DNA of 63,692 nucleotides, counting the filler, from Octopus bimaculoides (taxonomy: Eukaryota), in NCBI RefSeq assembly GCF_001194135.2. It is 8 parts of 7 records of this genome, joined end to end, with 100 filler letters (N's around TTAATTAATTAA, not from the genome) between each part and the next. Parts side by side here need not be neighbours in the genome. Positions count along the whole stretch, not along the records: positions 1 to 3,916 come from NC_069000.1; 7 more parts are not named here. One strand, written 5' to 3'. Position numbers and translations under genes: made by a program. How positions within the stretch are numbered: the stretch's first letter is position 1; every line of letters begins with the position of its first letter. Under the pieces are notes generated by a model. The model saw nothing but the letters and a program-made list of their open reading frames with translations, made no database searches and had not been told where the DNA came from. Positions 1 to 9,930 of the stretch are shown piece by piece.

Positions 1-281
1 GCAGGGTCTTTAAGCTTCCACACCCTTCTCCTCCAAGCCGGTCTACTTCTGGGCACCCATTTAGCCTTGATCCCGAAGTCGCTAACTACTAATCTATGTT
101 GTGGGGTACATTCTTCGCCAGGGAAGGTTTTGGCATTTATAAGCCGCCCTCTTTCCCTATTTCTGGTGAGGATGTAGTCGATTTGGCTAGAGTGTCTGCC
201 GGAGCGGTAGGTGACTAGGTGACTGGCAGGTTTCCTGAAGTTGGTATTGCAGACCATAAGATCGGTTGCATCACAGAACTC
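1..281 (-). mobile_element. RTE-clade LINE fragment, APE endonuclease C-terminal part; runs off the window edge
   Basis: Minus strand reads open for 93 codons: EFCDATDLMVCNTNFRKPASHLVTYRSGRHSSQIDYILTR...FPGEECTPQHRLVVSDF. The NTxF, TY, SQIDY and QH motifs are typical of the RTE-type apurinic endonuclease. Confidence 0.85.
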
Positions 282-935
282 AGAGAGAGAGAGAGAGAAC
301 AAACTGTAGATTGGGTTGTAGGTATTTGACACCTATTTCTAGCACTGGTGATGGTCATTACCAGTAACCCTTAACTATAATTATATCTTTATAATTATAT
401 ATGTAAAAAAAGAAAAATTAAGGCTATCTTTTGTTTTGAGTCGACAATTTATAAACAGACTTCACTAATTTCCGTGAGCACATGCTGTTTTATCAGCTGT
501 GTGTTGTCTTGTCAACTGTGTACTTGTTGTGTGTGTGTGTGTGTGTGTGCCTGCATGCTTGTTCTTGTGTGTGTGCATGCTTGTTCGTATGTGTGTGTGT
601 GTGTGTGCATGCATGCACATGCTTGTTCTGTTTTTATGTATTTATGTGTGTAGAATGTAGATATAACAAAAACACTGTCGCATTTTAAACTTGCATATAT
701 GTTCTTACCTGCTTTATCATCATCATCATCATTGATTAACATCCGTTTTCCATTCTGGCCTGTCATTAGCATAGAAGCACTCCCAGGGCGCTTCTATGAC
801 TTGAATTCTTCTGTTAAGCCCTGGAGGACTATAATGATGAAGGAACTGAGGACTGATCAATGGTGAACCCCTCCTTCTTAGAATTCGAGTGGAAAATTAA
901 CCACAGAAGATTGGAAATGAGGGGTACCATTGAGG

Positions 936-1733
936 TTATGAGAACGTCATTTTTTTTGTTAAAGTTGAAAGTATAGAAGGGGCATTAGTAAATGTTCTTA
1001 AACCATTGTTCTTGGACTTAGAAACAATGAAGTTATTGACTTGCATTAGAATATATTGCAGTTCCAGCTTTCTAAAGTTCTTCAGGCTGTTGCTTAATAT
1101 CTCAATAAAACCTCCAACTCTCCTCTCAGAGTTTACAGTACAAGAGGAAATAAGGAAATCTTCAGATAAAGAAATCATTGGAATTGTGTAATCACTATAC
1201 AGTTGTGAATTGTGTGCACTGTTTGCCAAAGTATTTGCATTTTGAATGAAAAATAATTTAGGTTTGTCAATAAGAGTTGGGCATTTGTTGGGGAAAAACA
1301 TTGGTAAAAACTCTGTTAGGGAGACAGTATCATCAGAGCATTGAATAGTACCAGGCTGTGGTCCTCGGGTTAGAATAATACAAATAAAACAAGCACATTT
1401 TGAATGGTCCAGTTTGCTCACATCGTTAAATATCTGTCTGAGGTCACCAACCTTCAAGTTGTTCCGAGTGATTACTTTAAATCCATACATCTTAAGTGTA
1501 TCTGACATAGAATGTACCTCCTCTCTCGAGATTTCGCAAGCATTACCAAATGACAATACTTCATTGTTAATGACTAGAGCATAGCCTTTTGTAAGATAGT
1601 TCATATTATATATTAAATCCACTGGTGAAAAAGATATATCATGTCCATTTAAACTGACTTCATCTAGATTGCGGTCAACAGGTACACTATCTGTATATAC
1701 TTTTTCGGTTCTTTGAATATTAGCAGATGACAT
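936..1733 (-). CDS. Caspase-3/7-like fold protein, catalytically dead (pseudo-caspase), single coding exon, 265 aa
   Basis: Caspase motifs in order: YNMNYLTKGYALVINN, DHSKCACFICIILT, CPTLIDKPKLFFIQ, EDFL, GFIEIL, ILMQVN, PSILSTLTK. SHG is replaced by TRG (R123, codon 1367-1365). QACRG is replaced by QNANT (A166, codon 1238-1236). No internal stops. Confidence 0.9.
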   Translation of the reverse strand: MSSANIQRTEKVYTDSVPVDRNLDEVSLNGHDISFSPVDLIYNMNYLTKGYALVINNEVLSFGNACEISREEVHSMSDTLKMYGFKVITRNNLKVGDLRQIFNDVSKLDHSKCACFICIILTRGPQPGTIQCSDDTVSLTEFLPMFFPNKCPTLIDKPKLFFIQNANTLANSAHNSQLYSDYTIPMISLSEDFLISSCTVNSERRVGGFIEILSNSLKNFRKLELQYILMQVNNFIVSKSKNNGLRTFTNAPSILSTLTKKMTFS

Positions 1734-1827: not shown

Positions 1828-1852
1828 CTACAAAAGAAAAAAGTGAGAAGCA
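1828..1852 (-). promoter_or_regulatory. 3' splice acceptor in the 5' UTR of the caspase-like gene
   Basis: Minus strand reads cttctcacttttttcttttgtag|ctgag, with exon start at 1827, 94 nt before the ATG. In-frame stops upstream of the ATG show this stretch is UTR. Confidence 0.6.
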
Positions 1853-2229
1853 TATTTTAAAAATGAATTACAAAATTTGAAAACAGTTAATCATTTGTAT
1901 AAATCAAATATTTCAGTTTCCAGTAATATGCTACTTAGCCCTGATTCGTTACAGTGTTCTTCATCCTTGAAGACAATACTTTCAGTGGGATAGACACTAC
2001 ATTATTATAACTTACAAGACCTATCCAAATATTAGGTTTTATAAAATTCATATTATTTTGATTTTATATACATCTTCATAACATTGTTTCATTCTGTTAC
2101 AAGTTTTTTCTTTGTGTATGAACAACAATGAGTTGGTTGTGATTTTTGATAAAACAAAAATTTATTCTTTTTGTACACAAAAACAGATATTGTTGTTACT
2201 ACAAATGACAAAACATTGAAAGACTTTTG

Positions 2230-2744: not shown

Positions 2745-3425
2745 AACTGTAGTGGAAATATATATTCAGTACCAGGTGTGAAACACTTTCAAACTTGGGA
2801 CACTGGTAGAATGTGTCATACAAAACAACTTTTTCTCTTAGTCTTCTTAACAAAAAAATGTACATCGCAAGTTATTTCATGTTAAAGTTGTCGTATTTCT
2901 GTAATTTCAACCAATCACTGACGTCTATTCAGCTGAATACAGTCAGTGCTGTCCGGTCATAAAAATGTTATTCCCTGTGACATATTTCATCCGGTTTAAT
3001 CGTAATTTATACGCATATATTGTTTATATAATAAATTACGCTGTGCGTATCTGTGTGTGTATATTTTTCCCATAACCTCACTCATAACCTTAACCCTAAC
3101 CCCAACCCTAACCCTAACTCTAAAACCCGAACCCTAACCTAAACTAGAGTTTGATTTGAAGAAGATTTGGCTGTTATTTCTAGGAAATGAAGCACTTGGT
3201 GGAGGTGCATTAATAATTCTTGTAGCTCCAATAACAAGTGCAGGCAATATTCAAGTATTTTGATGGCTTTTCCCCCTTTGTTTACGAACAGTCTAGTTAA
3301 TCGGAAATGTCAGAACTAACGGGGATTAATACCATATACACCGTCACAGCAGTTACTTTTATTCAACAAAATATACAAGTATACAAAGTTTGAAAGTGTT
3401 TCGGTACCAAAAACACTACATAAAA
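2745..3425. mobile_element. Foldback/MITE-like element with imperfect inverted arms and an internal (TAACCC)n-like tract
   Basis: Left arm tgtagtg...gtacc...gaaacactttcaaact is mirrored by agtttgaaagtgtttcggtacc...cactaca near 3384-3419. Degenerate telomere-like repeat at 3073-3143. Related copy at 15173-15437. Confidence 0.5.
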
Positions 3426-8990: not shown

Positions 8991-9787
8991 CCTAGCGGTT
9001 CGGTAAAAGAGAGGGTAGCATAGCAGGTGAGTTGTTTTATGATACCATTAGAAAAAAAGTGCTCAGATTTGCATGAAAATTCGCTTAAAATCAATCGTAG
9101 CATCAATGTAATCCCTGATGGAATAGTCCCATAGGGTGGTCACAGTTCAATTATACCCACATTTTAGCTGAAGCGATTGCAGGTTCTGTTATCAGGTGCT
9201 CTGGATTGCACAGTACAATTATTAATTCTATTTTGGGAACTAGCAGTATTAGCTTCACTGTTATTAAGATGGGGAGGTTTTATACATTTGTGATGATAGC
9301 TGTTATTCTTATTTGTGTTGCAAATAGAAGTATCTAATCTATTACAGATTACGTTAATGTAATTTACTCTGGGCTTATGTTACTTATTTTATTAGGATCG
9401 GCTCGGCACTATGATAAACAATAGTCGTGCTTGACACGTTATAGGTATTGTTCGATAAAACAGTAGTAATTGAAAATATTACATTCGGATATGAAGTTGA
9501 ATGGCCATTAGGTGTGTTATGGCTCACAGAATTGAAGTGGTTTATAATTCCCTAAACAGTTGTCACTGGGGTTCATGTAACTATTTTGAGGGGTATTACT
9601 AGTAGCCGGGTAACTGAGACAGCTACATGTAGTTAAAGGGAATGCCCGAGACGGATTTAAGTACATGATGTTGGAGCTAAATCTGACAGTTTGCATACAG
9701 GAAAGGAAAACAATACCACATCCAAAAATAAAAATATTTCAAAATATAAAAGATACACCATCTTGATTATGGCTGGGATATAACAGT

Positions 9788-9930
9788 TTATTCAAAGTAG
9801 TCGTCTTCAGTTTTCCCCGTGGCTTCCAGACGATTCCGGAACCAGGGGCTGGAGATCTACACTGTACTTCTGGGAAGATCTTCTAAAACTGTCAAATTGG
9901 TCTTGGCTTTGCAGGCTGAGTGGCTCCTCG
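9788..9930 (-). mobile_element. Tc1/mariner-type transposase C-terminal remnant
   Basis: Reads VLEDLPRSTV*ISSPWFRNRLEATGKTEDDYFE*, matching the F-R-x-R-L-E-A...G-x-Y-F-E* ending of Tc1/mariner-type transposases. Confidence 0.65.

What the first reader, a model, noticed from the sequence alone, without database searches (positions are those of the whole stretch)
936..1733. Intact effector-type pseudo-caspase with the whole active site dismantled
Seen in sequence: a full, stop-free 265-aa caspase-3/7-like ORF with a short prodomain. The catalytic His is Arg (TRG, codon CGA), the catalytic Cys is Ala (QNANT, codon GCA), the first S1 arginine appears absent by eye alignment, and the SWR-bearing L3 loop is about 6 residues shorter. 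Each catalytic change needs at least 2 nucleotide substitutions, yet the structural core and reading frame are preserved. Established knowledge: the best-known inactive caspase homologues (c-FLIP, nematode CSP-2/CSP-3) act as decoys or dimer partners; c-FLIP carries DED domains, which are absent here. Inference: a selected non-catalytic regulator, such as a dominant-negative or allosteric partner of executioner caspases, rather than a decaying pseudogene. Possible cleavage sites YTD15|S and YSD181|Y could let it be processed.
Basis: partly seen in the sequence, partly recalled or inferred. Interest (0 to 1): 0.8.

Follow-up and report, generated by a model that had tools for sequence, protein, structure and literature searches.

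The report
Conserved inactive caspase-3-like gene of octopuses
The window (Octopus bimaculoides) carries an intact caspase-3-like gene that has lost its catalytic residues yet has stayed open in at least five octopod species, so it is a retained "dead" protease and not a decaying pseudogene; what it does has not been tested.

Summary
Window 936-1733 (minus strand) is a 265-aa ORF with a full caspase domain (Pfam E 1.8e-25) and a confident AlphaFold caspase-3/7 fold. Arg (CGA) replaces the catalytic His, Ala (GCA) replaces the catalytic Cys, QACRG reads QNANT, and loop L3 is 6 residues shorter.

The window is O. bimaculoides chromosome CM046620.1. Orthologues occur in O. sinensis, O. vulgaris and an unidentified octopod, and two paralogues in Argonauta hians. 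All have a single-exon coding sequence and all lack Cys (A/A/A/A/A/T) and His (R/Q/Q/R/V/V).

The reading frames stay open although dS exceeds 1 between Octopus and Argonauta. Within Octopus, dN/dS is 0.5-0.65. The coding sequence has 0-1 indels, all in frame, where flank rates predict 12-22. Simulated neutral drift keeps all three ORFs intact in only 0.2-0.4% of runs. Pseudogene and assembly-error readings are therefore rejected.

The proposed role as a regulator or partner of executioner caspases remains an inference. The dimer-interface strand and an N-terminal [YF]TDSVPV motif are conserved, but the canonical linker Asp is lost.

Inactive caspase homologues are already a known kind (FLIP, dipteran decoy caspases, CSP-2/3, bivalve active-site variants). 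This is a new, apparently undescribed octopod member of that kind. Interest is moderate.

The parts
936..1733 (-). Complete single-exon coding sequence (265 aa plus stop) of a caspase-3-like pseudo-caspase
   Evidence: ORF list; Pfam Peptidase_C14 E 1.8e-25; caspase-3/7 PDB hits; AF2 pLDDT 79, pTM 0.76; Foldseek top hits caspase-3/7, TM to target 0.75-0.90
1674..1697 (-). Residues 13-20, YTDSVPVD: conserved short motif in the predicted-disordered N-terminal peptide. It is a candidate caspase cleavage site (TD|S), and cleavage would leave a new N-terminus reading SVPV
   Evidence: Residues 13-20 are invariant in the Octopus sequences except one V/I change (sp3, residue 19). FTDSVPV occurs twice and FTDSAPD once in Argonauta P0007. 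Regional pN/pS 0.31 for residues 1-20. pLDDT below 50. Cleavage itself is inferred
1536..1538 (-). Codon TGC, Cys66, in the column of the S1-pocket arginine (caspase-3 Arg64)
   Evidence: 40-sequence alignment. The column holds C/R/G/A/E across the family, so it is unconstrained
1365..1367 (-). Codon CGA, Arg123, in the catalytic His column (SHG reads TRG)
   Evidence: Other family members have Q, Q, R, V, V
1230..1244 (-). QNANT in place of the QACRG pentapeptide; Ala166 (GCA, 1236-1238) sits in the catalytic Cys column
   Evidence: Family members have A, A, A, A, T at the Cys column
1191..1193 (-). Asp181 (YSD|Y) in the shortened inter-subunit linker. It is a possible non-canonical cleavage site, conserved only within Octopus
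   Evidence: The canonical Asp column reads Asn (LAN|S)
1119..1124 (-). Arg204-Arg205, invariant in all family members, within an L3 loop 6 residues shorter than normal. It may be the remnant of the SWR arginine
942..980 (-). Residues 252-264, PSILSTLTKKMTF: the strand that forms the dimer interface in caspase-3/7 (beta-6). It is well conserved in the family and similar to active caspases
   Evidence: Predicted strand 253-256 with high pLDDT. p10-like region pN/pS 0.42
1828..1843 (-). CTTTTTTCTTTTGTAG, 95-110 nt upstream of the ATG: a polypyrimidine tract ending in AG, conserved in three Octopus-clade species. It is a candidate 3' splice acceptor, which would imply an upstream non-coding exon
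   Evidence: A similar element lies at -81 in Argonauta L007. O. sinensis has two XP accessions for the same protein. Splicing is not shown
1911..1920 (-). GAAACTGAAA (GAAANNGAAA, resembling an IRF/ISRE site) inside a 26-nt block identical in three species, 178-187 nt upstream of the ATG
   Evidence: Absent from the Argonauta upstream regions. Function is unknown

Best explanation
The ORF is one member of a small family of caspase-3-like pseudo-enzymes so far found only in octopods (Octopus bimaculoides, O. sinensis, O. vulgaris, one unidentified octopod, and two copies in Argonauta hians).

Shown: the protein keeps the whole caspase alpha/beta fold. It has lost the His-Cys dyad, the QACRG pentapeptide, the first S1 arginine, part of loop L3 and the canonical inter-subunit Asp. 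It therefore cannot be a conventional cysteine protease. The reading frame has been kept open, under relaxed purifying selection, since before the Octopus-Argonauta split.

Inferred: the protein acts without catalysis, through interaction surfaces inherited from caspases. The best-conserved parts are the p10-like half, which includes the beta-6 strand that forms the dimer interface in caspase-3/7, and a short disordered N-terminal motif, [YF]TDSVPV, that looks like a caspase cleavage site. The most likely mechanism is that it pairs with, or competes as a decoy substrate or binder for, the active octopod caspase-3-like enzyme (closest relative found: O. vulgaris CAI9722933, 32% identity end to end) or its regulators. 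That would tune executioner caspase activity, as FLIP(L), nematode CSP-2/3 and dipteran decoy caspases do.

My sub-confidences: selected non-catalytic caspase homologue about 0.9; acts on the caspase pathway about 0.45; direction of the effect (inhibitor or enhancer) unknown.
For: Caspase domain and fold.

Loss of catalytic and S1 residues.

The same losses appear in all family members from independent assemblies. The family is monophyletic in 100 of 100 NJ bootstraps.

Synteny: O. sinensis flanks align at 89-93% around the gene.

Selection:
- dN/dS is 0.50-0.66 within Octopus (bootstrap CI 0.34-0.94; Fisher p 0.001-0.02).
- dN/dS is 0.18-0.59 between Octopus and Argonauta depending on the method (ML 0.18-0.37), with dS about 0.7-2.5.
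- dN/dS is 0.64-0.72 between the two Argonauta paralogues.
- Neutral simulation keeps all three Octopus ORFs intact in 0.2-0.4% of runs.
- The coding sequence has 0-1 indel events, all in frame, against 12-22 expected from the indel density of the adjoining non-coding DNA, P at most 1e-4.
- Constraint is strongest in residues 1-20 (pN/pS 0.31) and in the p10-like half (0.42).

Alignment to the active O. vulgaris caspase-3-like protein runs end to end, prodomain included, E 2e-43.

Precedents for regulatory inactive caspases: PMC7586951, PMC11121540, and PMC3141678, which cites Bryant et al. 2010.
Against: No expression, protein, interaction or activity data were obtainable.

The only third-species contigs look genomic: they are bounded by microsatellites and collinear with the genome upstream.

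No canonical AATAAA or ATTAAA lies within 935 nt downstream of the stop.

Constraint is weak. Within Octopus, overall coding divergence (8.8%) is no lower than that of the alignable upstream flank (7.4%) for the closest pair. NG86 omega alone is only in the lower 8% of neutral simulations.

The nearest active caspase is only 32% identical, so co-evolution with a particular partner is not evident.

The linker cleavage site is not conserved in Argonauta. The N-terminal motif is missing from the annotated Argonauta P0006 model.
Confidence: 0.6

Rival explanations
1. A decaying pseudogene or neutrally drifting duplicate whose ORF is open by chance.
For: Catalytic residues are lost. dN/dS is high (0.5-0.65). 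Coding divergence is similar to the alignable flank for the closest species pair. NG86 omega is only marginally below neutral simulations.
Against: Six intact ORFs occur in five species, including Argonauta at dS above 1. The probability that all three Octopus ORFs survive substitutions alone is 0.002-0.004. Indel depletion has P at most 1e-4. There are 81 invariant residues across the family, concentrated in core strands and helices.
Confidence: 0.03
2. A sequencing or assembly error hides a normal SHG/QACRG caspase.
Against: The Cys column is Ala in five of six family sequences and Thr in the sixth. The His column is Arg, Gln or Val. These come from independent assemblies and SRA runs (GCA_001194135.2, GCA_006345805.1, GCA_951406725.2, GCA_054771915.1 and three Logan runs). 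The changes are accompanied by loop deletions.
Confidence: 0.01
3. A neofunctionalised protein whose retained function has nothing to do with caspase regulation. It might be a scaffold or binding protein using the caspase fold, an immune-induced factor, or an unconventional hydrolase using another nucleophile such as the family-specific invariant Cys132 (TIQC) or Cys198 (SSCT).
For: The family sits on a long branch and is only 32% identical to the nearest active caspase. Family-specific invariant motifs (TIQC[SL]D, S[ST]CT, [EN]RR) replace caspase motifs. A conserved GAAANNGAAA element lies upstream. Other pseudo-enzyme families have acquired unrelated roles (general knowledge).
Against: No independent evidence for any such role. 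No partner His is evident for an alternative dyad, because the His column is R, Q or V. The best-conserved surfaces are those caspases use for dimerisation, and the N-terminal motif is caspase-site-like.
Confidence: 0.3
4. The conservation comes from the opposite strand: an exon of the tropomodulin/leiomodin-like host gene, within whose span the ORF lies antisense.
For: A gene call on the opposite strand spans the locus (L005 1-17515).
Against: The opposite strand has only 56-61-aa ORFs in this interval, with no Pfam hit. The caspase homology lies on the minus strand. The Argonauta copies lie in other genomic contexts, with cyclin/galectin and HlyIII neighbours.
Confidence: 0.01

Closest known systems
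c-FLIP(L) / CFLAR, the vertebrate pseudo-caspase
   Same: It has a caspase fold with the catalytic Cys and His replaced, is kept by selection, and acts by heterodimerising with an active paralogue (PMC7586951, PMC11121540).
   Different: FLIP is a caspase-8/10 paralogue with tandem DEDs. The octopus protein has no DED or CARD, a 47-residue prodomain, and is closest to caspase-3/7. Its origin is independent.
Dipteran caspase-like decoy molecules (Aedes aegypti CASPS18; Bryant et al. 2010, as cited in PMC3141678)
   Same: They are short-prodomain, effector-type caspase paralogues made inactive by loss of catalytic residues. They arose by gene duplication and are proposed or shown to modulate a paralogous active caspase.
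   Different: They arose independently in insects. I could not read the primary paper, so details rest on the citing paper and my memory. The octopod family is old (dS above 1) and only 32% identical to its nearest active relative. No partner has been identified.
C. elegans CSP-2 and CSP-3
   Same: They are non-catalytic caspase homologues that restrain CED-3 auto-activation by binding it (established knowledge; not re-read here).
   Different: They are truncated or partial caspase homologues; CSP-3 is essentially a small subunit. The octopus protein keeps both p20- and p10-like halves in one chain.
Molluscan caspases with altered active sites: Crassostrea Cg3A (His to Tyr), the Cg3/7-like group (PMC7836458) and Euprymna EsCasp2_1X with QANSV (PMC9389742)
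   Same: They belong to the same phylum and show the same phenomenon: expanded caspase repertoires containing members with mutated His/Cys or pentapeptide.
   Different: Those were only catalogued, many lack a p10, and none is orthologous. No octopod or cephalopod effector-type pseudo-caspase family was found in the papers searched.
Active octopod caspase-3-like (O. vulgaris CAI9722933, P0160)
   Same: It aligns end to end, prodomain included, at 32% identity and E 2e-43. It shares ILT.G, QIFTDIS and KPKLFFIQ, and also has a single-exon coding sequence.
   Different: P0160 keeps THG, QACRG, R.GS, a full-length L3 with SWR, and a long linker. Its Pfam score is 216 bits against 90-107 for the pseudo-caspases.

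Membership tests
Caspase superfamily (Peptidase C14A fold) | Significant match to the caspase domain across both p20 and p10 | tested here: met
   Pfam PF00656 E 1.8e-25, profile positions 1-232 of 233; PDB caspase-3/7 E about 1e-19
Caspase superfamily (Peptidase C14A fold) | Caspase alpha/beta fold | tested here: met
   AF2 mean pLDDT 79.3, core above 90. Foldseek top 50 hits are all caspases (mostly caspase-3/7), probability 1.00, TM to target 0.69-0.90. This is a prediction, not a solved structure
Catalytically active caspase | His-Cys catalytic dyad (SHG ... QACXG) | tested here: not met
   Arg123 and Ala166; the pentapeptide reads QNANT
Catalytically active caspase | S1 pocket: Arg (p20 R.GTD), Gln (QACXG) and Arg (L3 SWR) | tested here: not met
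   The first Arg column holds Cys66. Gln164 is kept. L3 is 6 residues shorter; the invariant RR204-205 might stand in for the SWR arginine, but the alignment there is ambiguous
Catalytically active caspase | Asp in the inter-subunit linker for activating cleavage | tested here: not met
   The canonical column is Asn or Gln (LAN|S, LAQ|S) in Octopus and Ser in Argonauta. Other Asp residues in the linker sit at non-conserved positions
Pseudo-caspase (inactive caspase homologue kept by selection) | Fold retained, catalytic residues lost, and ORF maintained across species | tested here: met
Pseudo-caspase (inactive caspase homologue kept by selection) | Expressed as a protein | not testable with these tools
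   No RNA-seq or proteome access. The only indirect hints are that gene models exist in four annotations and that there are two XP accessions in O. sinensis
Pseudo-caspase (inactive caspase homologue kept by selection) | Binds and modulates an active caspase or its regulators | not testable with these tools
   No multimer prediction or experiment was available. The beta-6 strand is conserved
c-FLIP / caspase-8-like | Tandem death effector domains | tested here: not met
   No DED (PF01335) hit. The N-terminal peptide before the caspase domain is 47 residues and predicted disordered
Processed retrogene | Intronless copy of an intron-containing parent, with a poly(A) remnant or target-site duplications | tested here: not met
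   The coding sequence is intronless in all members. However, the nearest active relative also has a single-exon coding sequence. No poly(A) tract or signal lies downstream. A conserved candidate splice acceptor upstream suggests the gene is spliced in its 5' UTR

The most novel reading that the evidence does not exclude
The conserved disordered N-terminal motif [YF]TD|SVPV may be a caspase-cleaved switch. Cleavage after Asp15 would expose an N-terminus reading Ser-Val-Pro-Val. From memory, this closely resembles the IAP-binding motifs of Smac (AVPI), Hid (AVPF), HtrA2 (AVPS) and the Ser-initiated caspase-3 small subunit. The dead caspase would then be a caspase-activated IAP antagonist or IAP sink, and so a feed-forward or buffering element of octopod apoptosis built from a caspase body. 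The triplication of this motif in one Argonauta paralogue would fit selection acting on the motif itself.
Probability: 0.1. Interest if true: 0.6.

Novelty: new member of a known kind. Interest (0 to 1): 0.4.

Why it matters
Cell-death control in cephalopods is barely characterised. A conserved, lineage-specific inactive executioner-type caspase would be a candidate regulator of apoptosis, or of non-apoptotic caspase signalling, in animals with unusual neural complexity, rapid senescence and regeneration. It would also be a further independent case of the recurring evolution of protease-dead caspase paralogues, alongside FLIP in vertebrates, CSP-2/3 in nematodes and decoy caspases in Diptera. 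That would allow comparison of which caspase surfaces are reused when catalysis is given up. The finding is not surprising in kind: mollusc caspase repertoires are known to contain active-site variants.

Tried and rejected
1. Retrogene origin. It was attractive because every family member has a single-exon coding sequence at dispersed loci, and the O. bimaculoides copy lies antisense within a TMOD/LMOD-like gene. I dropped it as a claim because the nearest active caspase-3-like gene also has a single-exon coding sequence and no poly(A) or signal remnant was found.

2. Using the Logan contigs of the third species as expression evidence. Rejected: they start in (AT)n, end in (GT)n, and are collinear with genomic upstream DNA, so they look like genomic contigs.

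3. Identifying that third species from its SRA accessions in the literature. There were no relevant hits.

4. Reading Bryant et al. 2010 on the mosquito decoy caspase. The paper is not held.

5. Relying on pairwise dN/dS alone. A neutral simulation with the observed transition bias gives an expected NG86 omega of 0.72, range 0.46-1.11, so the observed 0.50 is only suggestive. ORF and indel integrity and the Argonauta comparison carry the argument.

6. Resolving the sister group by NJ. The family is monophyletic, but its sister is unstable: a cnidarian sequence, two mosquito sequences, or octopus P0160 in 37, 29 and 23% of replicates. This is probably long-branch attraction. A first, slower tree script timed out.

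7. Looking for squid or other non-octopod orthologues. None appeared between the family (E at most 1e-124) and generic caspases (E at least 1e-55) in two large protein searches. Unannotated ORFs in squid genomes could not be searched.

8. Identifying the ORF fragment at window 1-332. There was no Pfam hit and no significant PDB hit (best E 0.017, an unrelated BTB zinc-finger protein).

Full report
**What is there**

The 3916-base piece contains one long ORF, window 936-1733 on the minus strand. It is 265 aa; the next longest ORF is 86 aa. It matches the Pfam caspase domain over almost the whole profile (PF00656, E 1.8e-25, residues 49-262 on profile positions 1-232 of 233). Among solved structures it matches caspase-7 and caspase-3 best, at E about 1e-19 to 1e-20.

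An AlphaFold2 model built on a 40-sequence alignment has mean pLDDT 79 and pTM 0.76, with the core above 90. Confidence is low only in the first 40 residues, L1, the linker, L3 and L4. Foldseek against the PDB returns only caspases, mostly caspase-3/7, at probability 1.00 and TM to target 0.69-0.90. The caspase fold is therefore intact as far as prediction can tell.

**Active-site check**

In the HMMER alignments and in the 40-sequence alignment:
- The catalytic His column holds Arg123 (CGA, window 1365-1367).
- The catalytic Cys column holds Ala166 (GCA, window 1236-1238), and QACRG reads QNANT.
- The first S1 arginine column holds Cys66.
- About eight residues after the pentapeptide are deleted.
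- The canonical inter-subunit Asp column is Asn (LAN|S).
- L3 is six residues shorter and contains an invariant Arg-Arg pair.

His to Arg needs only one substitution at the amino-acid level. The S1 column is Arg in O. sinensis and O. vulgaris and so is simply unconstrained. YSD181|Y is specific to Octopus.

**Where it comes from, and relatives**

The exact protein is encoded on Octopus bimaculoides chromosome CM046620.1 (GCA_001194135.2). It lies antisense within the span of a tropomodulin/leiomodin-like gene call.

Relatives found:
- O. sinensis XP_029647315 and XP_029647317, 83% identical, in a syntenic locus whose flanks align at 89-93%.
- O. vulgaris CAI9737443.
- A 73%-identical ORF in Logan assemblies of three SRA runs from an unidentified octopod.
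- Two paralogues in Argonauta hians, 44-45% identical, at two other loci (GAB1600383 and GAB1601997).

All have single-exon coding sequences. All lack the dyad: the Cys column is A/A/A/A/A/T and the His column is R/Q/Q/R/V/V.

The family is monophyletic in 100 of 100 NJ bootstraps. Its sister is unresolved, probably through long-branch effects. The closest active caspase by distance is the O. vulgaris caspase-3-like protein CAI9722933. It aligns end to end, prodomain included, at 32% identity and E 2e-43, and it also has a single-exon coding sequence. No squid or non-cephalopod orthologue appeared in two very large protein searches. Unannotated ORFs could not be searched.

**Is it under selection?**

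Pairwise dN/dS:

| Comparison | dN/dS | Notes |
|---|---|---|
| Within the Octopus trio | 0.50-0.66 (up to 0.77 with YN00) | Four methods; bootstrap CI 0.34-0.94; Fisher p 0.001-0.02 |
| Octopus vs Argonauta | 0.18-0.59 depending on method (ML 0.18-0.37) | dS about 0.7-2.5, near or beyond saturation |
| Between the two Argonauta paralogues | 0.64-0.72 | |

I checked how much weight omega can bear. Neutral simulation with the observed transition bias gives an expected NG86 omega of 0.72, range 0.46-1.11. The observed 0.50 for O. bimaculoides versus the third species lies only in the lowest 8%. For the closest pair, coding divergence (8.8%) is no lower than that of the alignable upstream flank (7.4%).

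The stronger evidence is frame integrity:
- Simulated neutral substitution leaves all three Octopus ORFs intact in 0.2-0.4% of runs.
- The coding sequence has zero or one indel event, the one being an in-frame 6-nt deletion. The indel density of the adjoining roughly 340 nt of non-coding DNA predicts 12-22 events (P at most 1e-4).
- Open frames at dS above 1 in Argonauta cannot be neutral.

Constraint is uneven. pN/pS is 0.31 in residues 1-20, 0.81 in residues 21-41, 0.67 in the p20-like core, 0.48 in the linker and 0.42 in the p10-like half. The pseudogene, assembly-error and antisense-exon explanations are rejected (and the independent assemblies).

**How it probably works**

Shown: the protein is not a conventional cysteine protease; the fold is kept; the gene is retained.

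Inferred: it acts through surfaces inherited from caspases. Two features stand out.

The first is the C-terminal strand PSILSTLTKKMTF, which corresponds to beta-6, the caspase-3/7 dimer interface. It is highly conserved and close to active caspases.

The second is the predicted-disordered N-terminus. It carries a motif, YTDSVPVD, that is almost invariant in the Octopus species (one V/I change in the third species). The motif recurs as FTDSVPV twice and FTDSAPD once in one Argonauta paralogue. It looks like a caspase site (TD|S).

My preferred mechanism is a non-catalytic partner or decoy for the active caspase-3-like enzyme or its regulators. This is analogous to FLIP(L) (PMC7586951, PMC11121540), to dipteran decoy caspases (Bryant et al. 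2010, via PMC3141678) and to nematode CSP-2/3. Whether it inhibits or enhances cannot be said.

A more novel reading is that cleavage at Asp15 exposes an N-terminus, SVPV, like an IAP-binding motif. That resemblance is from memory and untested.

A neofunctionalised role unrelated to caspases remains a serious rival, at about 0.3. Supporting it are the long branch and family-specific invariant motifs such as TIQC[SL]D and S[ST]CT.

**Gene structure hints**

A CTTTTTTCTTTTGTAG element 95-110 nt upstream of the ATG (window 1828-1843) is conserved in three species. It looks like a 3' splice acceptor. O. sinensis has two XP accessions for one protein, consistent with alternative non-coding 5' exons. 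No canonical poly(A) signal lies within 935 nt downstream. None of this proves expression.

**Novelty**

Inactive caspase homologues are a known kind. Molluscan caspase repertoires with mutated active sites have been catalogued in oysters (PMC7836458), and one squid caspase with QANSV is listed without comment (PMC9389742).

In the literature I could search, I found no description of this octopod effector-type family. Databases label its members simply 'caspase-3-like'. I therefore class it as a new member of a known kind, of moderate interest (0.4). Expression and interaction tests are the decisive next steps.

Noticed in passing
window 1-332 (minus strand), continuing into masked sequence in L005 11402-13660: An open frame (MSNTYNPIY...SQIDYILTRN...QHRLVVSDFGIKAKW...) runs off the piece into an N-masked block. 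From memory it resembles the end of the AP-endonuclease domain of a non-LTR retrotransposon, but Pfam and PDB searches gave no significant hit.
   Followed up: partly
window 3085-3143: A degenerate (TAACCC)n array of about 9 copies, 78% matches. This is an interstitial telomere-like repeat, the reverse complement of TTAGGG.
   Followed up: no
window 500-620 and 283-298: A (GT)n / TGCATGCTTGTTCGTATGTGTG compound microsatellite about 320 nt downstream of the gene's stop, and a short (GA)n run. In the third species a (GT)n run starts only about 10 nt after the stop, where its contigs end.
   Followed up: no
window 1911-1920 (minus strand); L001 9819-9829; L002 153-163: GAAACTGAAA (GAAANNGAAA, resembling an IRF/ISRE site) lies inside a 26-nt block identical in three octopus species, about 180-200 nt upstream of the ATG. 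It is absent upstream of the Argonauta copies and of the active O. vulgaris caspase-3-like gene. It could hint at immune-regulated transcription, but about 0.3 chance occurrences are expected per window by my rough estimate.
   Followed up: partly
L005 1-17515 (minus strand of the locus), i.e. around the whole window: The pseudo-caspase gene lies antisense within the span of a gene call whose 325-aa product has a tropomodulin/leiomodin LRR domain. It is probably nested in an intron. The Argonauta copies are not in that context; their neighbours are cyclin and galectin genes, and an HlyIII-family gene.
   Followed up: partly
L001 about 9690-9790 (O. sinensis, upstream of the orthologue): A 52-nt insertion that repeats the adjacent sequence (GTGTCTATCCCACTGAAAGTATTGTCTTCAAGGATGAAG...). 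It is a local tandem duplication absent from O. bimaculoides and the third species.
   Followed up: no
L007 10001-11086 (Argonauta hians P0007): This paralogue has the N-terminal NGKPTIFTDSVPV peptide duplicated in tandem. A third copy is inserted in loop L3 and flanked by a repeated TTRTNR[RG]Y. It also has a 40-residue basic C-terminal extension. This is either real internal duplication of the motif or a model or assembly artefact.
   Followed up: no
L008 3001-3867 (O. vulgaris): The closest active caspase-3-like gene of Octopus (THG, QACRG, SWR intact) also has a single-exon coding sequence. Intron-poor executioner caspase genes may be a feature of octopods.
   Followed up: partly
literature, PMC9389742 Table 2: A Euprymna scolopes CARD-containing 'caspase-2' isoform is listed with the pentapeptide QANSV, so it has no catalytic Cys, without comment. 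Cephalopods may have more than one lineage of inactive caspase homologues.
   Followed up: no
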